A stretch of DNA of 63,352 bases, filler included, from Intoshia linei (lineage: Eukaryota > Animalia > Orthonectida), in NCBI GenBank assembly GCA_001642005.1. It is 6 parts of 6 records of this genome, joined end to end, with 100 filler letters (N's around TTAATTAATTAA, not from the genome) between each part and the next. Parts side by side here need not be neighbours in the genome. Positions count along the whole stretch, not along the records: positions 28,349 to 47,190 come from LWCA01000760.1; 5 more parts are not named here. One strand, 5' to 3'. Below are positions 28,349 through 47,190 of this stretch, one piece after another (positions within the stretch are counted from its first letter, which is position 1; each line of letters opens with the position of its first letter). Both the position numbers and the translations under genes were made by a program. A model generated the notes under the pieces. It was not told where the DNA came from. It searched no databases and saw only the letters and a list, made by a program, of their open reading frames with translations.

Positions 28349-30096
28349 CACCAATAAAATAAATGATTTTATAAATTTTAATCTAAAATATATTATTCTA
28401 AACGATTAGATAATTATTCAAAGTATTTTGATAAAATTTATTTAAAACCGTGACTATATTTTTAATTTCGTATTATATTGAGGACAAATTTAATTCTCGT
28501 TTATATTTTTAAGTAAAATTATGTGTAACTTAGTACAAAACCTTAATACGTATTAATATTATTTATTAATCCGCATAAATTGTCGTATTTAAGCCTTCTC
28601 CATAGTAAATTTCATCATATTAATAGAATACGAGATAAATTATACATTTGTATGTAAGTTTAGTTTTGACAATACTATTTTCGATTTTATTTACCGTTGC
28701 ACCATTATGTGGCATTATCATTATGGATTTGTACAATTTATTAAACGTCATTTTGATCAAGAAATAATAGAATAGTATGAAAATTATCATAGAAAATGTT
28801 TTCAAAAATACATTTGGCACTTCTGATAAACTAAATATTATGGAAATAGATTGTGTCAGATATTACGAAAATAAAGAATTAACCAATGAAGTATAAAATT
28901 GTAACCGATTCAACCGAAAGAGCCTACAAAAATATACATGATCATTAAATTTGTACACAAATGAAGAAGAAATTGAAAATACAGTGATGATTTTTAATAC
29001 ATTTTCATATAAATGCTTGGATTAATATTCCCGTTTATAATATATTTTGGGTTAAAATTTATAAAATCTTTTATTTTGTTGGTATATTGCGTTGAGGATA
29101 TATAAAATTTTGGTTGGATTATGACAATCTTAAGTCTCTTATAAAAGTAGACTAAAATTTTTGAAATGATAGACAAATTTCTACATTTAACCCACCACAA
29201 ACACCAAAACAAAATGATAAATATAGCTATAATTTAAAAAATTTTTTTTATATCATAGAATAATGTCAAAATACTCTACAAAAACGGCACACATTTATAA
29301 TTACGTACTTATGAAATACATATCAACAAAATATCACACTTCAGACTTGAGAATGTTAATGTTTATTTGTCAATTATAATTATACAGTGTTGTGCACTCA
29401 TATACAGATTAATACGATTTATATTAATATTAAATTTTATAGAATTCATCGACTACAGACTTAAGTTAAAACTGAAATATTAAGGTTAATTTTTTACCTA
29501 AAAACCATATTAAAAAAAAATTAAAAATATTCTCTGGTGTTTACACCAGTTTTTATCCATTATTATCCTATTCAATTATAAATATTGATCATATTAATAC
29601 AATTGTATTTTCAATGTTTTCAGTGCTATGTAATTATTATTATTTAAGTTGTGCCGTTTTTGTATATGCCTTTTTTGTCTGTGCCGTTTTTACCTATATT
29701 CAATGTCAATGGTGCATGACGCAGCTTAACATTATTTATTAAAATATACAAACATTATTAAATTTTCAACACAAACGAAGCATGAATTTAAGTTTTTAAA
29801 AAAATTTCATAAAACAAAAAACATCATTTTAAAAAAAACATGAAAATAAACTTAAATTTAATTATTTTTTGTTAATTACTTAATTGATTAACGCTGAGTC
29901 ATTAATAAGTATTTTTCAAAATTAGTCATCGGAGTCATTTTTTTTTCAAATTACATTTAATTTACTGGGTATGTTTTTGAATTTCTTAAAAAAAATATTT
30001 GATGTGACACCCTACTGTACATGTATAATTGAAATTATTATTGCATTATTGATGATATTTTTAAACAACCAAATACTAAAATCTTTATATTACCAG

Positions 30097-30230
30097 GTAT
30101 AATATTTATGCTGTTGATCGGAACAGTAATAATAATACTACTAATACGTCAGAACATTTTCAAGACGCCCAATAATAGAAAATTAAAAATATTTGATAAT
30201 GTGACACGATACTATACAATGGAATATTAA
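30097..30230 (+). CDS. Putative terminal exon of an orphan single-pass membrane protein
   Basis: Reads GIIFMLLIGTVIIILLI-RQNIFKTPNNRKLK...RYYTMEY*: a TM segment plus basic tail after a CAG acceptor. Upstream exons (about 28650-29000) could not be assembled cleanly. Confidence 0.4.
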
Positions 30231-30669
30231 TTTATCAATAAACAAAGACAAACTGTCCTAAAGCAAAAACTATCGATTTAATTAAATATGTTACAAAACT
30301 GGAATAAAAAATTAAAAATTTAAATTTTTACTTGGTTATGTTTTAAATGTCAATACTTATCGTCTTATCGATACTTGTATGTATCATGTATACTATCAAT
30401 AACTTTTTAAAAGTAAAACATATATTGTACATTTTATAATCTACTAGTTTCAATACTTTTAAATAAAGATTGTTTAATGTAATAAAGTATTCTATATTTG
30501 TTTTACGTATATTTATATATTATGAAAATAAAAAGTAAAAATTTATTCCAGTTTTGTTATTTTATATTTAGAAATTTTAACTATATTAACCGTCAGTTTA
30601 ATTTCAATTAATGGATATGAAGATTGTAATTTTATTTTGATTTTAATTTAGTAATGTCATAAATTATGA

Positions 30670-31029
30670 CTGATAAATTTTTTTAAATTCTAGGGCTGTT
30701 TTCAAAAAAATAGGAAGGGTAATTTGGGGATTTGGCCCTGAAGATATAATTTTTTTAAATTTAAATTTATGATAATGTTTATGATTTTAAAATCCGCATC
30801 AGCGTATATATTTTTTTAAATTCTCCAACTTGTTTGATTTTCAAAAAGAGGGCAACTGGGGTTTTTGACCCGTAAGATATGAAATTGGGAGGTTAAAATT
30901 TATCTTATTAAACGTTCCGGATAAAACTGTAATTGAAATGTGGTCTTTAAAAAATTCTAAGAGTGGTAGTTATTTCAATAAAATGGAACACACAAACAAA
31001 AATAGCGTAGCCTTTTATATAAGTTAGGA
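30670..31029 (-). mobile_element. Repeat family A copy
   Basis: Reverse complement of 4755-5125. Confidence 0.8.
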
Positions 31030-31270
31030 TTATAGAAATAAATATACGTAATACGTAAGATAGTAAAGATATCATTTTAAAGTAATATTTAAAATGACAA
31101 ACGCAACTCGATAGATAACGTTAACTGTTTTTTATTGTGAATTAGTTTTTCTATTTTAAAAATACACACTTTTAGTGGTAATTTCTCTTGATTCTTTGAT
31201 GGGTGTGACACTTTAATGTACATTGTATTACATTAATATTAGTAATGTATAATAAATATATGATAGTAAT

Positions 31271-34116
31271 AATAATCAGTTATAATTTAGATTTACTTTC
31301 CACAATCTACTCATCAGGCGACAAAATTTTAGATTATTTTTCAAATTATTGGTTTCCTGAAGATGATAGAACAGTGAAAAAAATGCCAAATACAGTAATC
31401 CATAATTTTCATTTAATTTCAATTATTCATATATTAGTGTGACCATTGTAACAATTAGCAGAGCGAAACTAAGATAAGTTCATGGTAAATAATGTCCAAA
31501 TCGAGATTAGAAGTCTAGACATGTAGAATACAATTATAGTGCAATCGTACTAAGAAAAAATCTTACAAATGATACTATTAACTATAGTAACCTAATCGGT
31601 TTTTTTTTAATGTTAAGACATGTTTAATTTTTAAAACAAGGCAAATTGGGTTTTTAACTCTGAAAGACTCAAATTCGGGAAATTTAATGTAGATATCTCT
31701 ATCTCTGCGAAAACCCGTATTAGAAATAGGGCTTTTTATTATAAATTCTACGACTGTTAATTTCAACTAGTTAATTAAATATACTGTAATATTTTTTATA
31801 TAATAGTCATCAATGTTACAGTGTAACATACCACATACATTCAATTTTGTATACAATTTTTGTATGTAAAAGGTTGTAATATTGAAAAATGACACAATAC
31901 AAAATTGCTTTTAAAAAGCTAGAATGTTTGAGACCGATCTTGACCATGAGACTAGCGAGGAGAGTGTAGTACATGCTTCTACACTATGGAATCATTTTAA
32001 CGATTAATACGAAGTTAACATGAAATTTGATGATTATTCCAGCTATAACCAAAATATTATCAGTAGAAATAATGATGTAACGGAAGATGAGATTATTAGT
32101 GATATCCTGAATTCATAATATTCATCCAACGTAAAAGTTTTTCTATGTTTCATAGAAATGACTGTATTGATCGCTTTTATTATTTCAAACTTTCATATCT
32201 AAAAAAAATGTTTATTATTGAAAAAGATTTACCTTAAAAATAAAATTTTATTTCTTATTAGGATTCGGGTTCGCGACTATAATGCACATTTTATTGTTTG
32301 TAATATAATTAAATAGTTTATAAATCATCATTATTTTGTGTGTTAAATTTAAAATGTCAAATAAAGAGCCTTAGAGAGGTGGCTAGGGAGTATATGAAAC
32401 GCATAATTTATGGAAAAATTTCAGATGCTAAATTTCATTTTCAGGTGGCCTCGAGTTGGGTAGGTTCGGATTTCTGCAAGTTACCCATTGATAAAAACTG
32501 ATGTAAAATAAAAATAATAGAACCTATAAACGACTCTAGAGTCTAGACCAGGGGTGTCAATTATGCTGCTCCCAATTGTAGAATGTGCGTTATAATATAA
32601 ATTTTTATTTTTATATCAATTTTTTACACATATTTATTTATTCATTACAATTACAACAATATACAACAAATACAACATTATTTGTACACTTTTTCCATTA
32701 TTACTGTTCTTTATTCATTTTATGAATTATAATTATTATAAATTAATTAAAACTGTTAGGTTTAACACAATTTTTTGAGGAAAGATTTTTTTGTGCAGCC
32801 CGCCAACAAATTGAGTCTGACAACCCTGGTTTAGAGTCTAGACTAATAGATATATATTTTTTTATCTATTGTATGACAAGAAAAAATATTGTAGTATATT
32901 TAAATCATAGAAAATTAAAAATGAAAATGAACTCAATATAACTAATACTGGTAAAGAAATTATTATTCAAAAGATTGGATATGAAAATAAAAAAATAGAT
33001 TTAAAAGATACAAAACAGTTGACTCACAAACCTGAACCCGGACAGGTAATGATTGATTAATATATTATCTAATACAGAGGTGAAATTTTTTGAAAAAAAT
33101 TTTATCCATAAACAGCGAATATCGAAAATTCCTATGATGTATCAAATTTGCACAAATAACATTTACAATGAGGTATAACATTTTTTCAATGTACCATATA
33201 AAATTTTCGATTTCATATAACAATGTTGTTGGTGCAGTATATAATGATACATAAATAGAGAAACTGAATTAAAAATGTATGATATCAATTCCTAGCTCTG
33301 CCGAGGGTGGGACTTTCTTAATTCTATCAAAAAATTCATTCACATATATATGTTAATAAAAAAATCTTACATCAAAATCCTACTATTAACTATGACCAAT
33401 ACATTAAAGGAGTGGTTACCAAAATTATTTCTCCGTGAAGCGGTGATTCATATTACATTAAATTTAAAGTGAATTAATCTTACTTGACCTTTCACTGTCT
33501 GGAATTGATGTTTTAATTTAAACTTGTATAATTTTTAATTACTGTCAACTCAACAGTCTTACAGAGGTGGATAGGGTTATATGACACTGCAATGCGTTTA
33601 CCAAATTTTTTAAGACCCTATTTTACATTTTAGAGGTGACTACAAGCTTGCTAGGTTCGGCTCTGCGAACTATCGAACTAAGTTAAATCTTTACATAGAT
33701 TAAATTTTACACACGTGAAAATAATTCAGGTTATTCAGTAAAACTTCAAATTATTTTTATAAAATGATGCTTACGTTTAATAATAATAAATGGACAATAA
33801 TGAATAATATTATTTTATTATTACAAAAAGTTATCTTGATTTTATTTGATATGATGAGAATTTCCTGTGGACCACTTTGGGAACCACTGATCTAATATAA
33901 TATTTTAATTTTAGCATTTAGACCAAAATGTTTGTTGGTATATTTTTTGCAGTTTTAATTATTATTGCAATAATATGTATTTTCGTTAAATTTATTACGA
34001 AAAAGAGAGTTAATTCTTATAAAAAAAGCAAAAGAAGATTAGAAAAATTAATACCCATTAATGATATAGCAGAAAATGAAAATCTAACAAAAACAAATAA
34101 ATATGGAGCTACATGA
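31271..34116 (+). pseudogene. Orphan single-pass membrane protein gene, probably 5'-degenerate (exons ~31271-31373, 32911-33045, 33922-34116)
   Basis: Exons DLLSTIYSSGDKILDYFSNYWFPEDD..., KIKNENELNITNTG...EPGQ and TKMFVGIFFAVLIIIAIICIFV-KFITKKR... join in phase 0. The candidate leader exon near 31095-31177 contains in-frame stops. Confidence 0.5.
32549..32828. mobile_element. Short hAT MITE
   Basis: TIRs CAGGGGTGTCA / TGACAACCCTG; flanks GTCTAGAC / GTTTAGAG (6/8 match, central TA). Confidence 0.75.
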
Positions 34117-34359
34117 AATTCATTTTATATTAAATTTTAATTAAAAGTTTTAAATTATAATTATAATTCATATTACAGGTGAATGTATTGAATTAAATCG
34201 CGTCTAGACAGTCAAATCATCAACAATTATTATTAATACAGTGACACTGTCACAGCCTGTGATACTCAAACATATTCAAAAATACTGTGCGAATATTATT
34301 TATGAACATTGTTCATTAATAAAAATATTAAGATATGAAATTTTCACTTAAAATTTATA

Positions 34360-35473
34360 TTGGAAATGTATAAACGTTCAATGCACAATTTGTTTGAATT
34401 TGTAATTTTAATATTTAAAATTTCATGTTAATATTTTGTTTGTTAACATTTGCGTAAAAATTTTTAAAAAAAATTATCCCATTTTTTTAATTTATTAGAC
34501 AGAATGTGTGTATAATATTAAAAATAAAGTAAAAACAGTCCAATCCTAAAAATTGTCATAAATAGCATAAATTCCAAAAAAATAAAATTAGTCCAATACT
34601 AAAAATTGTCATAAAGGTGTGAGTTTTGGAAATTGAAATTTATATTATTATATGTAAAAATTGTCATAAATAGCATAAATTCCAGAAAAAATAAAATTAA
34701 GAAACCTATTTTGTCATTTTCAATGTGATGACATATATTCAGTATCAATTTAATAAATAAATCCTAAAAATTGTCATAAATAGCATAAATTCCAGAAAAA
34801 ATAAAATTATAAACTATTTTGTTATTTTGAGTGTGTCAATTCAGTACCAATTAAATAAATACTTAAAAATACCAATTGTGTATCAATTATTAACTAAATC
34901 TTCAATTTATAAACATTTCAGTCGAATTTTACCATTATTACAAATGATTGTAATATAAAAATAATATTAACAAAGTTTTTTTTAGTTTAGTTGTTTAGTT
35001 TCTATTTACATTTTCAATTTTTATTATACAATTAATGTTAATCGAAATATTTGAAAAATATTGGTTGATAATATATTAAAAATTATTTTTCACCCGGGAA
35101 TGCGTAGATTCCTCGGGTTACTTTTGCATTTATATCAACTGGAATAAGCTCTATCAGAATAATTTTTTTTTTTAAATTTCTGACGGTTAATTATTTCACA
35201 TTTTTTGTTTTAATAAAATATTTCGGAAAAAAAATATATGAAAATTAAATGACTTTTTTGACTGTAAAGTCGTCACTTATTCGAATTGAAATTTTCTGTG
35301 TGTGTTAACAGGATACAACTGTACAACTTGTAATTTTTTTGAAATTCTAGGGCTGTTTTCATTCAAAAAAGAAGGGTAATTCGTGGTTTTGGTCCTGAAG
35401 CTATAATTTTTTATAAATTTAACAAATACACACACAAACAAAAATCGCGTAGCATATTATATATATGTTAGGA
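34360..35473 (-). mobile_element. Repeat family A copy with an inserted, tandemly reiterated second repeat (34500-34985)
   Basis: Matches 9368-10140 in reverse; the middle matches 14335-14630 in forward orientation. Confidence 0.7.
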
Positions 35474-36833
35474 CATGTATTTGAAATAATTTAATTATTT
35501 TTGTATTGGTTCATTTTTATTCACACTTCTTTCAATTTATACATTTTTTTTAATAACATTACATATATAATTACACTGTGCAACAAAATGAAACTTTTTT
35601 TCGAGGATTTTAAACAAAAATTCAGTACTTTTTCTCATACATGGTACAAAGTTACTGAAAAATTTTTAGACAAATTTATCGCGCACAATAGAAAATGTAG
35701 CCATTCTTATGTTGTGATGTATTGGTTTAACAGTAACTAATAAATAAGTGCGTATTTAATGATTTATCTGTAAAATTGTGAATTTTTAAACGATTTCAAT
35801 ATATTTGATATTCATTCTATTCAGTTTTCTCTATAAAATTCAATAAAGCTATCAGATTTGAAATATCAGACCTTTTTATAAACAATTTAAATAAAATAAT
35901 ATTTAAAATTTTTAACTTATTTCATTGATGATTAATATCACAATTATAGAAGTCGCGGATTTCAAAAAACTAAAGTGTATACGAAAGATTAATGATTTAA
36001 GAATATAATTTGAGAAGACCTTTATTATTCATCGTGCAGCTATTTTTTAATTAAACAATTAATACAACGAAAAAAAATTTATTTATTGACGTTTCATGTA
36101 TTTCCTTCACCACATATAATCAGACAGCATGTTAACACAATTTAAAAATTTCAAAAAAAACAAAATCTATTTTTCTTTTCTGAATTACATAAACATTCTT
36201 TAAAATTAGTTAACATTTTAATAATATAAATTTCTCAATAAGGTAAATTTTAACAATATTAATCAATTTTAATCTAAATCCAATCACTAAGACTGTATAT
36301 GAGTATTTGAGAAGTTGATATAGAAATAATAAATTAATATTTTATGAATGAACAAATTAAAATGTTAATAACACTTGAACTACACGGTGTATTTGATTTA
36401 AATTTTGTACATCGTCTAATAGTGTTAGTCTGAATAATTTAACAAATTTTTTTAAAAATACTTTTTGGAGTGTTGCAGTGTTATTTTTAATCTATAATGG
36501 AGCAATAATTTTATATCATTTATTTTGAGATTATTATTAGAAAAAATTTCGTTTTAACGAATCAATAGTATATTTTTAGTATATTGGTGTGTCGCAAAAA
36601 CTTTTCAGATTAAAATGTGTGTCGCCAACCAAAATGGGTTGGAAAGCACTGTCCTATACATTCATAACGTTAAATCCAAATAATACAAACAAGTAAATAT
36701 CTATAATAAACTTTGAGTAAATATTGACATTAAATTATAATAGAACAACGTATTAATTCAAAAATGAAGGTTGATATATGTAAGATGGATACATAAATAT
36801 ATATTACATTATTAATATATAACTGTCTATAAA

Positions 36834-39800
36834 ATGAAAATTTTAAATTTAGTTCAAGTTTTGATAATTTTGATTTTTGTTGCGTATACTCAAAGCATTT
36901 CTTTTGATTATTGGAAAGTAATATTATATTTCGACACCTATTTATGCGTACATCTAGAAATTAGTGATGGGTGAAGATTATCCAATAGACAATAGTAAAA
37001 TTTCGACACACAATCCAGACAAAAATGTAGATAAAAAGAACGATGATAAAACAAATAAAAAGCAATCAAATGTGGTAATGAGCAGGTCATAATATCAAAC
37101 CAAAATGAGTGAATTCACGTTCTGTTAAAGTTATTTATGATTTCATCAAATTTGTAAACTTTAGTCCAGTAATTCTCAAACTTTTTTTATCACAGCGCGC
37201 ACTTTGCATTAATTAAAAATTTTGGTTAGTACTATGTATAATATATTAAAAGTTTATACTATTACTAAATATATATAATAATAAATCTTCTAGTCAGGCA
37301 TAGGAACTTATATTGTAAAGCAGTGATTCTAACTTTTTTAGTGCTGCGACCCATAATAAAATTTTAATAAAAATGTTTGTGTATTATTATTAAAAATAAA
37401 ACGATGATATTTAACTTCTCTCGACCAATAAGTTTGGAAGCATTGTCTTAAAATGAGCAATAATTAATAATGACATTTTTTATTAAAATTAATGTTTGAA
37501 ATTTTAGCTTGATAAGTTTTAGCAATTTTATTAATATTCAGGTCGAATATGACACAAAAAAAAGCGCATTTGAGTTTTCTGAGCGCGAACTACTGCATAG
37601 ATATTTACAATATACAGTATACTCTCCACAACTCGCCAACTCTATAACTCATCAATTCTATACTTCGCCAAATGATATTACTGTAATATCAAAATATACA
37701 TGTAGATTAAGGTGTGTCCTAAAACACTTTTTCGAAACAAACCAAAAGTAGCCAACTGGTAAAGATAAAACTTTTTATTGCGAACAAGATGATGTGCTTG
37801 AAATTGTCTAACTCTCAAAAAAACCCTTGACTTTTTGCTTTTTTAAACTAACTTTTAATACAATTTTTCAACAACAAACATAAACTTTATAAAAAAATAT
37901 TGGTGTGGTAACAATGTGAATTCATGCGTATAAATAGTATATGTAACATTTGTGAGTATATATAATGGCATGGTTATCACAGTTTATCAGAAATCCTTCT
38001 CGATAAAACCCTATTTTACCCAAAAATTCATAAAAAACAGAATTTATAGGACAGAGGGTTTCTTGCTGTTTTTTTCTAACAATTATGACATTTGAAATGC
38101 ATGATCTTGTTCGCAAGAATTTTTATTACATTTGTATTTGGTTACTTTTGTGAATTTAGTTAATATAATTAATTAGCAGTGAAAATAATTTGATCAATTT
38201 TATAAAAAATTAAATTTTTTTTTTTTTTAATTTTAAAGTTTATACGCGATTCATTAAATTTGTAGGACCCTAAAGTTTAAAATTGATCTATACTGGATGG
38301 GGATTTGAGGATTTAATAAATATATTGCATAATATTTTACAAAAAATTTTTGGATTAATTTTTTTTATTACTATTTTTCAAATTTTTATCCTTAATAAGT
38401 TGATGTTAAAAATGTGTCCATACTTTTGGTCTTTTTTCTTGTGAATATTACTTTTCTTTTTACCATTTTATGTTTAATTTGTAGCAATTATCAATAAAAA
38501 AAATAACACGTTTCAGTTGATATAAACTTAAAATTGATGGATATTACACTAATAATATTTTCTTGTCAAAATTTAGAAATTCTTGAAAATTACATAGATT
38601 TTGGGTATAGAATATATAAAGATATCAGATATCAGGCAGACATAAGATTGAAAGAGTTGTAAATCTTACATATTATAGTGGTTAATTTTTTTAAATGAAC
38701 TTTAAAATTATTACCGACACTTAAATCGTTTGATGATATATTTAGGATACTAAGAACGAGGAAAGTTTAAACCTAGAGAAGACAGTCAATACTAATAAAA
38801 ATAATAAGACTATAAATGAATCAATGGCAAGTAAGGTATTGGCCATAATTACAAATGTAAATGGAAATAGCAGTGAAATTGTAAACAAAGTTGAAAGAAA
38901 AATAAAAGAAAAATTATCAGGCATAACAGAAAAAATTCCTAAAATTAAAGAAAATGCTCCTCAAAATGCTACAACATTAAACAAAGTTGATGTAATTTTA
39001 CATTTTTAATTTAGCGACCAGAAATACGTTTTTTTGGCAACACCGAAAACCCGTAAGATGTGAGTTTGGGAGGTAGAAATTTATTTTGCTAACACATCGG
39101 AAAAAACTGTAATTGAAATGTGGACTTTATAAAATTCTAAGACCGGTAGTTATTGAAATAAATTAGAACACACACAAACGAATATTGCGTAGCATATTAT
39201 ATAAGTAAGGATAATAAGAATATATACAGTATGTAAATATTAAAGTATGTAAATTAACACACAAATGCACTAAAAATGAACTGTACCAGAAAATCTTCTT
39301 TTAAATTTTAAGAGCATTAATAATAATTATATAAATGTTAACTTTTTTTTTACTACATTTTATTATATAATTCCTACAAAAAGATTAAATAGAAAATTCC
39401 TTTTGTGACCCTGAAGGCACAATTTTGTGAAATTAAATTTTTTGTATGTAATTTGTTGACTAGTTAATTTGAAATGAGTTAGGTGTAATTTTTTTAAATT
39501 GTTGAACTTTTTTTTAATTTTTGAAAATAATGAATAATTTCTGTCTTTGGCCGAGAAGATGCAAGTTTATAAGGCTGAAATTTATGATAATAGTTATTAT
39601 TTTAAAATTTTTCCCAGAATTTTTGTTTTTGAAATTTCTATGATCGTTATTTTTCTTTATAAATTGTTACACAGACAGATGAATTAGACAACTTTCAACA
39701 GCTATTAGTAAGGATTTACATTTTTATATTGAGCAACCATTAAATTGATGGAAATGTATAAATTCTAAAAAAATGGTACACTTAAGTTTTAATTTGTCAC

Positions 39801-40060
39801 TATATATTCAATTTGCTTCTCTTTATAAAATTAAAATTTAGAATATATATCGTACGCTGCATTACTGTCTCGCTGGTGGTGGTTTTTTGGTACTTTTAGT
39901 AGTATTTGTAATATCAATCGTCTTAAATCAAAAAAGAAGTAAATTTGATAAAAGACATCAAGACTTTTATCCAATAGATATAGGTAACGAAATTGACAGT
40001 GTGTCGCAGTCTATCGATAGTACCGGCAGCACTCAAGAATCATGTGTTGACAATATATAA
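36834..40060 (+). CDS. Orphan type I membrane glycoprotein, 221 aa (exons 36834-36917, 36958-37074, 38746-38991, 39842-40060)
   Basis: Signal peptide MKILNLVQVLIILIFVAYTQS; K/N/E-rich ectodomain with NxS/T sites; TM YCLAGGGFLVLLVVFVISIVL; tail ...ESCVDNI*. All introns are GT-AG, phase 0, with no stops. Confidence 0.8.
39045..39211 (-). mobile_element. Repeat family A fragment (terminal part)
   Basis: Very similar to 43630-43795. Confidence 0.8.
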
Positions 40061-40400
40061 ATATAAGAATATATACATGATCCATACAATATGTTTATGA
40101 ATAAATTTTCAATTAATGTTTTTAATGAAATCTTAAATTAAAGTTTGCTATATTGTTAATATTTTTTGCTTTGAGTTTGAATTGTATGTTGAAGTAACTA
40201 AATTCTTGATTAGTGGTCAATGACAGGTGGTCATACATTAAAATCCTTCACCTCCATTCTGTTTTTGATAAGTTATATACCCAAATTTGGTATTTTAAAT
40301 TCAAATATATTCAAAATGATACTAAGCAAGTTAAATTTATTTTAAATTTATATAAATATACAATTTTAATTTCAATATTCAATTATTTAATTCAATAAAA

Positions 40401-40645
40401 TCCTTACATTAATGTTTATTTATTCGTCTGTTCCAGTTTATTTAAGAAAGTAAGAGGAACGATATTTAAAAATCCCATATTTCTATTACAGTTTTTTGAG
40501 TTATGTTTTATCGCAAATTTTACTTTCAGAAATTGAGTCCTTAAAAATCAAAAACCTCAATGGTTCTTTGTTTTTAAATTCAAAACCGTCCTAGAATAAT
40601 AAAAAAATACACAATCTGATAAAGATTTTAAATTTATCAACATTA
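40401..40645 (+). mobile_element. Repeat family A, second subfamily fragment
   Basis: Matches 20380-20615. Confidence 0.7.
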
Positions 40646-40765
40646 AAGTCCGAGACTGTGAACATGGTGAAGTAAGATTATCCAAGGCTTAAAAGGTATC
40701 ACGAGATTAAGATGTTTAAAATATCATTGTCAGAGTTTTACACCGTAGTTTGATGATTTGTTTAG

Positions 40766-43700
40766 GTTATTAATACCGAGGAAAGTTTAAACCAAGTGAA
40801 GATAAACAATACCACAATTAAAGATAAGATAAGCAATGGCAATGTAATTTTACATTTAATAAAGCGACCACAAATACGTTTGTATTTCTGGTAGCTCGAA
40901 TTTGTATAATAAATATTAAAAATTTAACGTTTACATTTTGTTTCATAATAATATATTAATGTTTGGTGGTCCAAACACATGACGAGTGAGCGCCAAAAAA
41001 TAAATTTTACAAATTTCGCGAAACGCAACATTAGAAATTATAATCCAAAGGCAAGTATAACTTATACATATCTTAACTTAACATATATTATTGGACTTAT
41101 ACTATAAGTCATATATATAAAAATAAAACGTTTACAGATTAATCAAAAAATTACTACGAAAATCGTGAATCACGATTCGTGATATTAATACTACGCCAAT
41201 TAAAAATATAATTAGTATTTTATAAAGTTATAATAGTAAAAAAAGTCCCAAAAGTTAGAATTATTATTGTAAAGTACAAAAAGTAAGAAATTGAGAACAA
41301 TTTGTCAGAAAGACTATTTAAAAAATTTAAATTAATGCTAGTTATTATGGTAATTATAATATTTGTGTAAATCAGTGCTTCTCATTGGGGTGACTGTGCA
41401 CCCCAAGAAGTGAATAGTTTTATGAGGGGGTGAATACTAAAATTTTAGATGATTGTGGGTGAATAGCCTATTGTATATTGTATAGTAGGGGTGTGATTTT
41501 TTATACTTTTTTTCAAAATTTCATGGTCCAAATACTGATAAAGTTACGTGTGATAGTTTTAATATAATCGTGAAAAGAAGAAAAATTTTTGAAAATTTTT
41601 AGTGGAAGAGCTCGCCATTTTAAAAATTTCATACAAAAATGTTCTACAAAAACTAAAATATAACTTTATTTACGGGAATGTTACGATGGGATCCTGTAGT
41701 TATGTTTTAGTTTTTGTAAATTAATTAATAAACTAGGCTAATTTATAAAATTTTGGAACACCCCTATCGTATAGCCTATAGTCAATGATAAATTTTTAAC
41801 ATATTTTATTCCATTTAGTCAAATATGTGATTAAATCAAAATTTTACCAACCCTTAAGAAAAAAAATCTCTCTATCAGATCCCAAAAAAAACCCAATTTT
41901 ATCAACCCTTAAGGAAATAATCACCTTTTACCAATATTTTTTTAAAAAATCCAATTTTATGAAAATTTTATATAGAAATCTCTTTTTCTGATTCCAAAAG
42001 AAAAAACCAAATGTAGATGTTTCGTGTACAAAATTGACTTAACCTTTTCATACATTTAGTTTAACCAAATTTCAAAATAAAATTTTTTTTTAAAGTTGCT
42101 CATCTAATTGATATTCTTATCAATAAATGAATTATGGCAATCACAATTACTATATTTTTTTATTTCTGAATGATAGTGGTATCTACAACGTAGATTTAAA
42201 CATGATTACTCTCATGAAAATATTGAAAATACCATGCATTATTTATGATTCCTGAAACAAACAACAAAAATTTAAAATGATGTCATCACGTGAAGACATC
42301 ATGTGTAATCAAATTTAATTAATTCAGTACATTTTATAAGTCCAAATTGTGTCTTCCTACACAATTATGACATGTCATAATAATTGTTTTATTGGGGGTG
42401 AATATAACAAAAATATGTGTCACAGGGGGTGAATGCTCAAAAAAGTTTGAGAAACACTGGTGTAAATCATTGTTTTTCAAAATATATTACTGAACAATTT
42501 CGAGGGCAGCACAATTTGATGTGGCGGGCCACGGTTTGGACCACCCATTTGCATATTTCTTTAGGTTACTAAAATCGAGAAAAGTTTAAACAAATTGAAG
42601 GTAGTCAATACTGATAAAACTGATGAGAACAAAAATAAATCAATAACAGGTAATATATTGGATATGGTTCAAAAAGTCGTTATAAATAACAGCGAAATTG
42701 TAAACAAAGTTGAAGGAAAAATAATAGAAACATTTTCAGACATGAAAGAAAAAATTAACACAATTAAAGATAATATAAACAATAGCAATGTAATTTTACA
42801 TATACACTAAGTTGACTGTTATGTACTACGTACAAACAGCAACTAGCTCTGCCGAGGCACATTTTTATTCTACCAAAAAATAAATTCACGTTGAAAATCT
42901 AACTTAAAAATCCTATTATTCACTATTATCCATAAACAAGTGGTTCCCAAACTTGTTTCAGGTGGAACCATCATATGACATTACTATTGAAAATCTAACT
43001 TAAAAATCCTACTATTCACTATTATCAATTCTTTAAAGGAAAAAATAAATTCACGTTGAAAATCTAATTTAAAAATCCTACTATTCACTATTATCAATCC
43101 TTTAAAGGAGTGGTTCCCAAATTTGTTTCAGGTGGAACCATCATATCACATTACTTTTTACTTTAAAGTGAATTATTCCACTTAATTTTTTTGTTTAACA
43201 TTTGCTTATGATTTTCAAATCGTTAATTATTTCACATTTTTTGTTTTAATAAAATATTTCGGAAAAAAATATATGACCTTTAATTATTTCACATTTTTTG
43301 TTTTAATAAAATATTTCGGAAAAAAAATATATGAAAATTAAATGCTTTTTTTGACCGTGAAGTCGTCCACTTATTCAGATTTAAACTTTTTGTGTGTGTT
43401 AACAAGATACAACTGTACCACCTGTAAACTTAAATGTCAACCTATTTTAAATTCTAGGCTGTTTCCATAAAAAAAATGGGTAATTTGTGGTTTTGGCTCT
43501 GAAGATATTATTTTTTTAAATTTAAATTTATGATAATGTTTATGATTTTAAAATCCGTATTAGAGTATATATTTTTTTAAATTCTCGAACTTGTTTGATT
43601 TTCAAAAAAAAAGGACGATTGGGCTTTTTGACCCGTAAGATGTGAGTTTGGGAGGCTGAAATTTATTTGGCTAACACCTTGAAAAAAACTGTAATTGAAA

Positions 43701-44528
43701 TGTGGACTTTATAAATTTCTAAGACTGGTAGTTATTGAAATAAACGGTAACACACACACAAATAAATATTGCGTAGCATATTATATAAGTAAAGATTTGT
43801 AATATTAAATTTTTTGTGATTTTTTTTAAAATGGATTTACATATTAAACTTTTATAGATAAATATTATTTATCATTTTATACGAAAAATTATTTTTCAGT
43901 CATCAGAATGAACCTTAATTTATACTAGTTATTTTATTGAAAAATATAATTTTTTCAATTTTTTTAAGGTGCGTGTCGTACACTATGATGCTACGTAACT
44001 GTTATTAAATGATCACTATTGAATAGTCAATAAATTTCTAGTACAATTTTATTTCCGGTCGCTCGAAATTGTAGAATAAGCATTAAAATTTTAATTTTAC
44101 ACTTTGTTTGACATTGATGCATTAATTCATGGTGGTACAAAGTTTGTACTATAAACATATGGTGAGTGAGGGTCAAAAATAAGTAAGGATTTACAATTTT
44201 ATGTTGAACAACCATGAAATTGACGAAAATGTATAAATTCTAAAAAATGGTACACTTAATCTGTATTTTCAATTTACTTAAAATTACAATTAAAATGTAT
44301 TATTAAATTAAAATTTAGAATAAATATATTCTGCTGCACTACTGTCTGGCTGGAGGTGGTTTTTTGATACTTTTAGTATTATTTGTAATATCAATCGTCT
44401 TGAATCACATAAAAAGCAAATTTGAAAAAAGACAGCAAGACTTTTATCCAATAAATGTAGATAACCAAATTGATAGTGCATCACAACTTTTCGATGACAC
44501 TGAAGAATCATGTGTTGACAATATATAA
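40766..44528 (+). CDS. Duplicated 3' cassette of the orphan membrane protein (exons 40766-40843, 42565-42789, 44319-44528); no leader exon of its own found
   Basis: Exons VINTEESLNQVK..., VTKIEKSLNKLK...NNSEIVNKVEGKI... and NKYILLHYCLAGGGFLILLVLFVISIVL...EESCVDNI* are paralogous to 38746-38991 and 39842-40060. All are open and phase 0 with intact TTTAG / GTAATTTTACA splice sites. Confidence 0.75.
41373..42459. mobile_element. Complete hAT (Buster-type) non-autonomous element with 8-bp TSD GTGTAAAT
   Basis: TIRs CAGTGCTTCTCA / TGAGAAACACTG; subterminal GGGGTGA motifs; GTGTAAAT at 41365-41372 and 42460-42467. Confidence 0.92.
42819..43190 (+). mobile_element. Repeat family B copy with internal duplications
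   Basis: Matches 10756-10990; TTGAAAATCTAA.TTAAAAATCCTA.TATTCACTATTATC occurs three times. Confidence 0.75.
43220..43795 (-). mobile_element. Repeat family A copy
   Basis: Reverse complement of 9368-9860 and 4755-5200. Confidence 0.8.
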
Positions 44529-44659
44529 ATATAGAGAATATACAGTGTATATTATACCATGATCCATAATTATGTTTATGAATACATTTTCAATTAATGG
44601 TTTTAATGAATTTTTAAATTAAAGTTTGCTACATTGTATACTATGTACTATAACTTTAA

Positions 44660-45065
44660 AGCGTTTCTCCTCTTAAATTTATCTAGCCACCCTTGCGAAC
44701 ATTTTAAGTCTGTTGTTATATTCTTGTACCAACATTTTCGCTTTTTCTACTAATATCAAATCAGTTAATATCATTCCTTTTATTTCTAATTTTTCAATAT
44801 AAATCAATAATTTGCGTTCTACTTCTTCATATTTTAATGTATATTCTCTTTTTAAATTCCCATTTCCTTTAAATATCCTATGTACAATTCTATCCTTGCT
44901 TTTTAAATAATCAGTTATTGATCTCTTTTTTATGTTTTTTTTTTAAATGGTCGAGAAAATAGGTGACAATTGATCATGGGGACATAATATATTTTCTTGT
45001 GAATATTTTATTATTCTATATTTTTCTTTGTTAGTAAATCGAGTGTATTTCATTCTTTTATCATT
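44660..45065 (-). pseudogene. pogo/Tigger transposase N-terminal HTH relic
   Basis: KRMKYTRFTNKEKYRIIKY...HDQLS..F resembles the CENP-B/psq HTH; frameshifted. Confidence 0.45.
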
Positions 45066-46807
45066 ATTCATAATGAACGTTGCAAATTTATTTAAAATAG
45101 AAATAATAGAAAATGTATGTTTCCGGTATAAGCAATGAAAAAAACTTGTTTTTAAATTAACCATTAATAAAAAAAATTACAATTACAATTTTAATTGATA
45201 TTGCCGATTATCAAAGTAGGTTATTTTGGTTAAATTAGTTATTTAATCACATAATTAATCACTTGTTAATTAGTTACAGTTATATGTGTAGTATTTTAAA
45301 CAGTTTAATTTAACAGAAGCTACAACATGGTAAATTATATATTCTTTTAGAGTTATTAATTACTTGGTTGTAAGATTCTGGATTGATCGATATTAACTTT
45401 GTAAATATAGATACAGTATGAATATACGACTATATGAAACGGGTTTAAAATAAAACATTTAATTTATTACATATAAAATTTGATATTTATATATTTTTCA
45501 TCAGAAATTTTGGGCGAATAATTGAATTTTACTATGGAAGTACTATATAAATTAAAATTAACCGGGCGAATAACAGAGGTTATACTGTATTTCATTTTTC
45601 AAAAGCTCATAAATAAAGTAGGATTTTTTTGGCCGGGTAGCACAATGTGCTAAGCACATATATGTACTAAGTACATTGTACTTATACGTAACATTAGAAT
45701 TTAAATTAGTATAAGTGATATTATTTTTCATGTACTGACCAATGGTCAGTGACCATGTCAATTTGATAACGTCAAAGATTTATATTCGTCACATTCCGAT
45801 TTTTATTTTCGAATATAAGTACAATAAATACAATTGTAATGTTATTTCATACGTGTTAAATTAATTTTTTAACATATATTATATCGACAAGTTTATATAA
45901 ATATTGTTGAATGTAATAAAGTATTTCATATTTACTTTACGTAAATTTATTTGAAAAAAGAAAATGAAAATTTTTGGTAAAATTTAATAATCATAATAGT
46001 TTTTAAGCTAGTATCTAATTCGATAATATCTAATAATTCCCTGACTCTCTTTTTTCTTTTTTTTTCGTGTCCAGTGTTCATATCAAATATATTACATAAT
46101 AAAATATATACAATGTATATTATACATAAATAATTTAAAAGTAATGTATTTTAAATACTTTAACGATTTAAAAAATGTAACTGTTATAATTAACCAATAT
46201 TAATAAAGTTTCATCAAGGTAGCTTTATTTTTTATTAACACATTTTATTATAATTATTTTTAATATGATTTAACATGATCCCAGAATATGTTAATTATAT
46301 AGGATATTTAATTCCTTCGCGTTAAATAGTTTCAGAAAACCAAGTTTTTATTGAAATTTATTTTTAGATATATTTTTAATACTATTCGTAAGTTTCATTA
46401 CGGTAAAAGGAAAAGACAATGGTAATTTTATATTTACATTGGGTTTCGCATTCTTTAATCAACTCTGATGAGACTTTATCCGCCAGAGAGTGCCATTTCA
46501 ATACAAGACTGAACTATTCATTCTTATCTTAAATTCACTAACTGAACCATAAAAAAGTCATCAATTTACCCCAAGGTTTATTAGTGTTATGTAGGTATGT
46601 ATCTACTGCACCGAGCAAAAAGGTTGACAATATTTAAAGCATTTTGGAAATTATTTTGTGGCATTCCTCGAAGTACTTTGAAAATGTAGCTATTTTGTGT
46701 AAATATTAATAATAAGAAACTTATTTACAATATGTTAAAACCAATATAAAATTCCTATCTGCCCGAGAAAGTCTCTATGATATATGAATATATGCGTGAG
46801 AAAAATA

Positions 46808-47190
46808 TTAGGTCGTTTCATAAGTAATGTCGTTTTTATTGTAACTTTATTATAAATCATATCTTTACGAATATTTATTGTAAGTGCGTTATTTTTTTAT
46901 TTTTACGAAATATAGAAAAATGTGTATTCGATGAAAGAGTAATTTCCGATGACAAACATATTTTTAATACGTATTTAGAGAAACAAGTTGGATGATTATG
47001 ATAGTTTACTTTATGAGTTATAATTGGATGATTATGATGGTCATATCAGACATATTTTACTTTATGAGTTTCATATGGAGCATACCGTATCGGAGGAAAC
47101 TAATGAAAATGTATGTAATGTTTATGGCAAAGATGTTATCAACATACGAAAAACTCAAAGATGGTTCTTAAAGTTCAGACAAAACAATTA
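46808..47190 (+). mobile_element. mariner element, 5' part (TIR plus transposase HTH), cut by the spacer
   Basis: TA|TTAGGTCGTTTCATAAGTAATGTCGTTTT resembles a mariner TIR; HIRHILLYEF...VCNVYGKDVINIRKTQRWFLKFR is the Mos1-type HTH. Confidence 0.88.

What the first reader, a model, noticed from the sequence alone, without database searches (positions are those of the whole stretch)
36834..44528. One leader, two interchangeable 3' cassettes: candidate variant surface-protein locus
Seen: a signal-peptide exon and exon 2 (36834-37074) precede cassette 1 (ectodomain exon 38746-38991 + TM/tail exon 39842-40060). Cassette 2 follows (ectodomain exons 40766-40843 and 42565-42789 + TM/tail exon 44319-44528). 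Every exon is open and phase 0 with intact splice sites, and the indels between copies keep frame. The TM and C-terminal ESCVDNI are nearly invariant while the glycosylatable ectodomain exons are strongly diverged. I found no second signal-peptide exon between 40060 and 40766. Inference: alternative splicing/polyadenylation could attach the single leader to either cassette, or mix the three ectodomain exons with two tails, giving variant surface proteins. That would be notable if this is a parasite. The ORF track misses the structure because the key exons lack start codons.
Basis: partly seen in the sequence, partly recalled or inferred. Interest (0 to 1): 0.8.

Follow-up and report, generated by a model that had tools for sequence, protein, structure and literature searches.

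The report
Duplicated 3' half of orphan membrane-protein gene
In the parasite Intoshia linei, a small species-specific membrane-protein gene has had its back half (outer-domain exon plus membrane-anchor exon) copied in tandem; the second copy has stayed readable but has no start of its own, so it probably shares the first copy's leader, which is an ordinary kind of gene duplication and not a proven antigen-switching system.

Summary
The piece is the whole 18.8-kb contig LWCA01000760.1 of the orthonectid parasite Intoshia linei. The span 36834-44528 is exactly GenBank gene A3Q56_05234 (OAF67041.1, 387 aa, hypothetical protein).

Layout: one signal-peptide exon and exon 2, then two tandem units (ectodomain exon, TM/tail exon with its own stop, 3'UTR). 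Between them lies a relic third ectodomain exon (ectoA).

The public model fuses both units through a weak donor (GTTGAC) four codons before the first stop. That gives a two-TM protein that conflicts with the positive-inside rule. I think this join is a prediction artefact.

Cassette 2 looks selected:
- no stops;
- only frame-keeping indels, 2 in 431 coding nt against 20 in 543 flanking nt;
- all splice sites intact.

It has no leader of its own, and the "exon-2-like" stretch near 40666 is chance. A shared leader with alternative last exons is therefore the best reading (about 0.5), untested for lack of RNA data.

"Variant surface-protein locus" is not supported. Only this one protein was found among 1.84 billion representatives. 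The contrast between conserved TM and diverged ectodomain also holds for the flanking introns, so it is regional and not exon-specific.

Interest is low to moderate.

The parts
36834..36917 (+). Exon 1: start codon and signal peptide (28 aa, MK + hydrophobic core + YTQS/IS), donor GTAATA
   Evidence: equals residues 1-28 of P0001
36958..37074 (+). Exon 2 (39 aa, K/N/D-rich, predicted disordered), after a 40-nt intron. A second in-frame acceptor lies 6 nt downstream, so the exon could start at 36964. Donor GTAATG.
38746..38991 (+). ecto1: ectodomain exon of cassette 1 (82 aa, predicted long helix, 4 N-X-S/T sequons), acceptor TTTAG, donor GTAATT
39842..40060 (+). TM1: terminal exon of cassette 1 (TM helix, 43-aa tail ending ESCVDNI, TAA stop)
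40046..40051 (+). GTTGAC inside TM1, four codons before the stop. The public 387-aa model uses it as the donor that fuses cassette 1 to cassette 2. It is the only donor of the locus that is not GTAAT.
40061..40181 (+). 3' flank of cassette 1, 86% identical to 44529-44660, with AATAAA at 40100 and ATTAAA at 40137. Similarity between the units ends here.
40300..40645 (-). Inverted copy of a dispersed ~430-bp repeat (R1) between the cassettes. Other copies lie at 30660-31092, 35174-35634, 39049-39260 and 43425-43810.
40766..40843 (+). ectoA: 26-codon relic ectodomain exon (5' and 3' ends of the exon, in-frame internal deletion), splice sites intact
40844..41010 (+). Relic intron after ectoA. The first 40 nt match the intron after ecto1 (87%). 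The next ~100 nt match 44042-44141 upstream of TM2 (77%). No TM exon follows.
41373..42459 (.). 1087-bp transposon-like insertion in the ectoA-ectoB intron. Terminal inverted repeats are CAGTGCTTCTCA / CAGTGTTTCTCA. The 8-bp target-site duplication GTGTAAAT lies at 41365-41372 and 42460-42467, which is hAT-like.
42565..42789 (+). ectoB: ectodomain exon of cassette 2 (75 aa). Sequons at positions 24 and 41 are shared with ecto1.
44319..44528 (+). TM2: terminal exon of cassette 2 (TM helix, tail ending ESCVDNI, TAA stop)
44529..44660 (+). 3' flank of cassette 2, with AATACA at 44581 (where cassette 1 has AATAAA) and ATTAAA at 44618

Best explanation
This is a lineage-specific (orphan) single-pass type I membrane-protein gene of Intoshia linei. 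Its product has a signal peptide, a disordered K/N/D-rich linker, a long helical N-glycosylatable ectodomain continuous with the TM helix, and a short acidic tail ending ESCVDNI.

The 3' half of the gene was tandemly duplicated: ectodomain exon, intron, TM/tail terminal exon and about 120 nt of 3'UTR. This left two complete cassettes and one relic ectodomain exon (ectoA) behind a single leader. These steps are shown.

The following is inferred. Transcription starts only at the one leader. Processing at the first terminal exon and its poly(A) site gives the short form e1-e2-ecto1-TM1. Skipping that exon gives forms ending in TM2, such as e1-e2-(ecto1)-ectoA-ectoB-TM2 or e1-e2-ectoB-TM2. All are in frame because every junction is phase 0.

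The public 387-aa two-TM fusion model is most likely a gene-prediction artefact.
For: - Identity of the locus and the public model.
- Duplication map.
- Cassette 2 is leaderless. Every cassette exon has an in-frame TAG at its acceptor. No exon with ATG, a hydrophobic stretch and a phase-0 donor exists in 40061-44318. No significant copy of e1/e2 is present.
- Cassette 2 looks constrained. There are 2 indels (21 and 9 nt) in 431 aligned coding nt, against 20 indels (16 not multiples of 3) in 543 aligned non-coding nt.
- The probability of staying stop-free under neutral change is about 0.16-0.19 for ectoB times 0.33-0.39 for TM2.
- All splice sites are retained, including GTAATT donors on all three ectodomain exons.
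- Two sequon positions are shared by ecto1 and ectoB.
- Each cassette keeps a stop, an identical ESCVDNI end and ATTAAA downstream.
- Against the fused model: its donor GTTGAC is the only non-GTAAT donor. Both TM helices have +4/+5 C-terminal flanks and +1 N-terminal flanks. By the positive-inside rule (established knowledge) both therefore want the same orientation, which a two-TM hairpin cannot give.
Against: - No RNA evidence was available. Other authors cite only genomic read sets for I. linei (10.1101/282285), and no transcript-derived protein turned up.
- dN/dS is not significantly different from 1 in either exon pair: ecto 1.69, TM 0.62, both p about 0.24. Constraint therefore rests on the absence of stops and frameshifts, not on amino-acid conservation.
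- Introns of 1.7-5.5 kb would be needed, in a genome whose median intron is 57 bp (PMC6543705).
- A canonical AATAAA and an ATTAAA behind TM1 would favour termination before cassette 2.
- Indel counts in AT-rich non-coding alignments are partly aligner-dependent.
Confidence: 0.5

Rival explanations
1. Cassette 2 (and ectoA) is a non-functional partial duplicate. Only e1-e2-ecto1-TM1 is made, and the downstream copy is untranscribed or untranslated DNA that has not yet acquired a disabling mutation.
For: - No leader or promoter-proximal copy for cassette 2.
- dN/dS is indistinguishable from 1.
- Exon identities (76%, 85%) are about the same as those of the adjacent non-coding DNA (70-72%, 81-88%).
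- AATAAA has changed to AATACA behind TM2.
- ectoA is plainly a remnant.
Against: - With non-coding divergence of 12-30%, the cassette should carry several frameshifting indels. About 8 are expected on its own lineage at the flanking rate, and none is seen.
- Survival without a stop has a probability of about 0.06.
- All five cassette-2 splice dinucleotides and the stop codon are retained.
Confidence: 0.2
2. The public annotation is right: one 387-aa protein with two TM helices. It would be made by splicing from the GTTGAC donor inside TM1 (40046) to ectoA (40766).
For: This is the deposited model OAF67041.1, and every piece maps contiguously on it. GT and AG are present and the frame is kept.
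Against: - The donor has T at +3 and shares nothing but GT with the other five donors, which are all GTAAT.
- The four codons and the stop that the model discards are identical to those of TM2, and the 3' flank stays 86% identical.
- Both TM helices have positive C-flanks. Homologous glycosylatable ectodomain exons would end up on opposite sides of the membrane.
- Whether the model had RNA support is unknown to me.
Confidence: 0.1
3. Cassette 2 is an independent downstream paralogue with its own promoter and an unrecognised, non-homologous first exon. Alternatively it could get its 5' end by trans-splicing.
For: Tandem paralogues are the commonest outcome of tandem duplication. Cassette 2 has its own stop and poly(A) signals, and 566 nt of unrelated DNA separate the units.
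Against: - No ATG-started hydrophobic exon with a phase-0 donor lies anywhere in 40061-44318.
- tblastn with e1 and e2 finds nothing.
- ectoA has no methionine, and the only one in ectoB is internal. A trans-spliced or leaderless product would therefore lack a signal peptide.
- I found no report of spliced-leader trans-splicing in orthonectids.
Confidence: 0.1

Closest known systems
Alternative last-exon genes built from duplicated 3' cassettes, e.g. vertebrate CALCA (calcitonin/CGRP) and Drosophila lola (comparison from my own knowledge)
   Same: Common 5' exons are followed by two or more 3' cassettes, each with its own stop and poly(A) signal. All junctions are phase-compatible, and the cassettes are related by duplication.
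   Different: Here no transcript has been seen, so alternative use is inferred only. The cassettes encode the same kind of module (ectodomain helix + TM + tail), not different hormones or zinc fingers.
Tandem partial gene duplicates / unprocessed pseudogenes
   Same: It is a head-to-tail duplication of part of a gene without its promoter and first exons. A relic exon (ectoA) and transposon-filled introns are present.
   Different: The downstream copy has no stop, no frameshift and no lost splice site, despite 15-28% divergence.
Parasite variant surface antigen families (trypanosome VSG, Plasmodium var, Giardia VSP)
   Same: The organism is a parasite. The predicted product is surface-exposed and glycosylatable, with a diverged outer part and a conserved anchor and tail.
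   Different: Those systems rest on tens to thousands of gene copies with exclusive expression. Here there are two and a half cassettes, and no other relative was found in 1.84 billion representative proteins.
t-SNARE coiled-coil homology domain proteins (the automatic UniRef name of this protein)
   Same: A helical, heptad-like segment lies directly before a C-terminal TM helix.
   Different: There is no Pfam SNARE or syntaxin hit even at E = 10. The protein has an N-terminal signal peptide and a 40-aa tail after the TM helix, whereas SNAREs are tail-anchored with a cytosolic N-terminus. The name is not supported.

Membership tests
Tandem segmental (partial-gene) duplication | Two or more collinear copies, head to tail, covering exons and the adjacent introns and flanks | tested here: met
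   38728-40181 matches 42547-44660, including intron blocks (88% and 81%) and the 3' flank (86%). A third partial copy lies at 40748-41010.
Alternative last-exon / alternative 3' cassette gene | Shared upstream donor(s) that are phase-compatible with the acceptors of each cassette | tested here: met
   All exons are phase 0 at both ends, with AG acceptors and GTAAT donors.
Alternative last-exon / alternative 3' cassette gene | Each cassette ends in its own stop codon and poly(A) signal | tested here: met
   TAA at 40058 and 44526. AATAAA 40100 and ATTAAA 40137 follow TM1; AATACA 44581 and ATTAAA 44618 follow TM2. These are sequence motifs only.
Alternative last-exon / alternative 3' cassette gene | Transcripts joining the common exons to each cassette are observed | not testable with these tools
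   No I. linei RNA data could be reached. No transcript-derived protein was found.
Variant surface antigen system | Large repertoire of paralogous variant genes or cassettes in the genome | tested here: not met
   The TM/tail profile finds only P0001 among 1.84e9 representatives. A word search with the whole protein finds only itself. Unannotated copies elsewhere in the assembly could not be searched.
Variant surface antigen system | Diversifying selection on the exposed part | tested here: inconclusive
   Ectodomain dN/dS is 1.69 but p = 0.24 (7 synonymous against 48 non-synonymous differences). Flanking non-coding DNA is equally diverged.
Unprocessed pseudogene (dead partial duplicate) | Disabling mutations: stops, frameshifts, lost splice sites | tested here: not met
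   None occur in ectoA, ectoB or TM2. This is unlikely under neutrality.
t-SNARE | SNARE motif recognisable by profile; tail-anchored topology without a signal peptide | tested here: not met
   No SNARE family appears in the Pfam scan at E up to 10. An N-terminal signal-like exon and a 43-aa post-TM tail are present.

The most novel reading that the evidence does not exclude
The orthonectid uses one promoter and leader with alternative 3' cassettes to put different helical, glycosylated ectodomains on an otherwise constant membrane anchor and tail. This might vary by stage or sex. It would be a minimal splicing-based way for a drastically reduced parasite to vary a host-facing surface protein.
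Probability: 0.1. Interest if true: 0.6.

Novelty: new member of a known kind. Interest (0 to 1): 0.3.

Why it matters
The gene has no detectable relatives, encodes a likely surface protein, and belongs to one of the most reduced animal parasites known. Such orphans are candidates for host interaction.

The practical result is a correction. The deposited 387-aa two-TM model, and its automatic 't-SNARE' name, are probably wrong. The locus is better described as one leader plus duplicated 3' cassettes.

If RNA data showed both cassettes in use, it would be a clean young example of alternative last exons born by tandem duplication. It is not evidence of an antigenic-variation system.

Tried and rejected
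- Pfam on every exon and on the whole public protein gave only sub-threshold noise. PDB sequence search gave nothing.
- The word search with the TM exon gave nothing. With the whole protein it found only itself.
- The ESM Atlas gave only scores at or below 0.80, which is chance level. This includes a TMEM154-like row at 0.77 that I do not credit.
- The AlphaFold2 single-sequence model had pLDDT 51, which is too poor for a fold search, so none was run.
- Rfam and tRNA scans of the contig were empty.
- A remnant of exons 1-2 in front of cassette 2 was sought and rejected as chance.
- Assembly artefact or collapsed alleles were rejected. The copies differ by 15-30%, carry different transposon insertions, and are accompanied by a unique relic exon.
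- The original genome paper is not in the library, so I could not learn whether the annotation used RNA evidence.
- Step left out: I did not build or search joined isoform sequences of my own (e1-e2-ecto1-TM1, e1-e2-ectoA-ectoB-TM2 and so on). Exons were searched one by one by reference, and the only joined protein used is the public one returned by a tool (P0001).
Full report
**Origin of the sequence.** The piece 28349-47190 is 24% G+C. It is letter-for-letter the whole contig LWCA01000760.1 (18,842 bp) of assembly GCA_001642005.1. That assembly is Intoshia linei, an orthonectid parasite of nemerteans.

The finding's span 36834-44528 is exactly the annotated gene A3Q56_05234. Its product is OAF67041.1, a 387-aa 'hypothetical protein'. 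UniRef automatically names it 't-SNARE coiled-coil homology domain-containing protein'.

**Check of the observation.** Their boundaries are:
- e1 36834-36917, donor GTAATA.
- e2, donor GTAATG. The model's acceptor places its start at 36958.
- ecto1 38746-38991, TTTAG / GTAATT.
- TM1 39842-40060.
- ectoA 40766-40843, TTTAG / GTAATT.
- ectoB 42565-42789, TTTAG / GTAATT.
- TM2 44319-44528.

The paralogy is far beyond chance. TM1 against TM2 is 69% aa identical (E = 1e-35), with the TM core and ESCVDNI-stop essentially identical. ecto1 against ectoB is 49% aa identical (E = 2e-14). Indels between the copies are 21 and 9 nt.

In this composition a stop is expected every 11 codons on average. Chance open frames of 69-82 codons have a probability of about 1e-3.

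**Map of the duplication**.
- Unit 1 (about 38728-40181) and unit 2 (about 42547-44660) are collinear. The match runs through the ectodomain exon, parts of the intron, the TM/tail exon and about 120 nt after the stop, where similarity ends.
- ectoA carries the 5' end and the 3' end of an ectodomain exon with an in-frame internal deletion.
- The first 40 nt of ectoA's downstream intron match the intron after ecto1 (87%). The next ~100 nt match 44042-44141 just upstream of TM2 (77%). Similarity then stops and no TM exon follows.
- ectoA is thus a relic of a third unit.

The introns are long (0.85-1.7 kb) for a genome with a median intron of 57 bp (PMC6543705). They are stuffed with repeats:
- A dispersed ~430-bp element occurs five times on the contig, once inverted between the cassettes.
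- A 1087-bp element at 41373-42459 has CAGTG... terminal inverted repeats and a perfect 8-bp target duplication.

**The public model.** All seven pieces map contiguously on P0001. To get past the stop of TM1, the model splices from GTTGAC at 40046, four codons before the stop, to the acceptor of ectoA. I think this join is an artefact, for four reasons:
- It is the only donor of the locus that is not GTAAT, and it has a pyrimidine at +3.
- The discarded codons and stop are identical in TM2, and the 3' flank remains 86% identical.
- Both TM helices have a strongly positive C-terminal flank (+5 and +4) and a weak N-terminal one (+1). By the positive-inside rule both want the C-terminus inside, which is impossible in a two-TM hairpin behind a signal peptide.
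- ecto1 and ectoB share two sequon positions, yet they would lie on opposite sides of the membrane.

**Is cassette 2 alive?**
- Substitutions alone do not say. dN/dS is 1.69 for the ectodomain pair and 0.62 for the TM pair, both p about 0.24 against neutrality.
Identity is 81-88% near the TM exon and 70-72% near the ectodomain exon. This is a regional gradient, from duplication steps of different age or from gene conversion. It is not proof of diversifying selection.
- Indels do speak. There are 20 indels in 543 aligned non-coding nt, 16 of them not multiples of three. There are 2 in 431 coding nt, both multiples of three.
- If cassette 2 had drifted since the duplication, about eight indels would be expected on its own lineage.
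- Neutral substitutions would leave it stop-free with a probability of only about 0.06.
- All of its splice dinucleotides and its stop codon are intact.
- I conclude that cassette 2 has been under coding constraint for most of its history. This is an inference, and it is somewhat dependent on the alignment of AT-rich DNA.

**Does cassette 2 have its own leader?** No.
- Every cassette exon has an in-frame TAG at its acceptor and cannot be extended.
- tblastn with e1 and e2 finds only themselves.
- A scan for an ATG-started hydrophobic exon with a phase-0 GT donor recovers exon 1 as a control, and finds nothing in 40061-44318.

**Best reading.** A textbook parallel is calcitonin/CGRP (my own knowledge). 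Possible products are e1-e2-ecto1-TM1, and forms ending in TM2 with one to three ectodomain exons when TM1 is skipped. I give this about 0.5, because nothing at the RNA level could be checked. The rivals are:
- a dead but not yet broken duplicate (0.2);
- the fused public model (0.1);
- an independent gene with an unrecognised 5' end (0.1).

**What the protein is.**
- It has no Pfam family, no solved relative, and no relative in the word index.
- A profile of the two TM/tail exons finds only this gene's product in 1.84 billion representatives.
- The single-sequence AlphaFold model is poor (pLDDT 51). It predicts a long helix through each ectodomain exon into the TM helix, and disorder elsewhere.
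- The SNARE name is unsupported, both by profile and by topology.
- It is best described as an orphan type I membrane glycoprotein candidate.

**Antigen-variation claim.** 'Variant surface-protein locus' in the sense of an antigen repertoire is not supported. There is no family, only two and a half cassettes.

Exons were handled one by one by reference, and the only joined sequence used is the public protein that a tool returned.

**Verdict.** This is a new example of a known kind, namely tandem duplication of a gene's 3' half creating candidate alternative last exons. It comes with a probable mis-annotation worth correcting.

Noticed in passing
window 30522-34116 (+): The only other annotated gene of the contig (197 aa, no Pfam). 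It also starts with a hydrophobic leader-like exon and ends in a TM + basic-tail exon (33922-34116). It is a second small single-pass membrane-protein candidate next door, with no detectable sequence similarity to the finding's gene.
   Followed up: partly
window 30660-31092, 35174-35634, 39049-39260, 43425-43810 (+) and 40300-40645 (-): A dispersed repeat of about 430 bp occurs five times in 18.8 kb at 65-88% identity. Copies sit in the same place in both cassette introns, and one lies inverted between the cassettes. It may have mediated the rearrangements. The family is not identified.
   Followed up: partly
window 41373-42459: A 1087-bp non-autonomous transposon with terminal inverted repeats starting CAGTG and a perfect 8-bp target-site duplication GTGTAAAT, which is hAT-like. 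Similar termini occur at 37167 (+), 36651 (-) and 33889 (-).
   Followed up: partly
window 47024-47188 (+): The contig ends inside a mariner/Mos1-type transposase N-terminus (Pfam HTH_48, E = 3.7e-17), cut off by the contig edge.
   Followed up: no
window 37775-37823 / 38071-38119: A 49-nt inverted repeat pair (71% complementary, 247 nt apart) lies inside the long second intron, within a larger imperfect palindrome at 37743-38150. It is probably another foldback or MITE-type insertion.
   Followed up: no
window 42875-43158 and 43223-43326: Short local tandem and interspersed duplications lie in the ectoB-TM2 intron: a 59-nt unit in 3 copies, a 56-nt unit in 2 copies and a 47-nt unit in 2 copies at 100% identity. 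They partly match 33292-33536.
   Followed up: no
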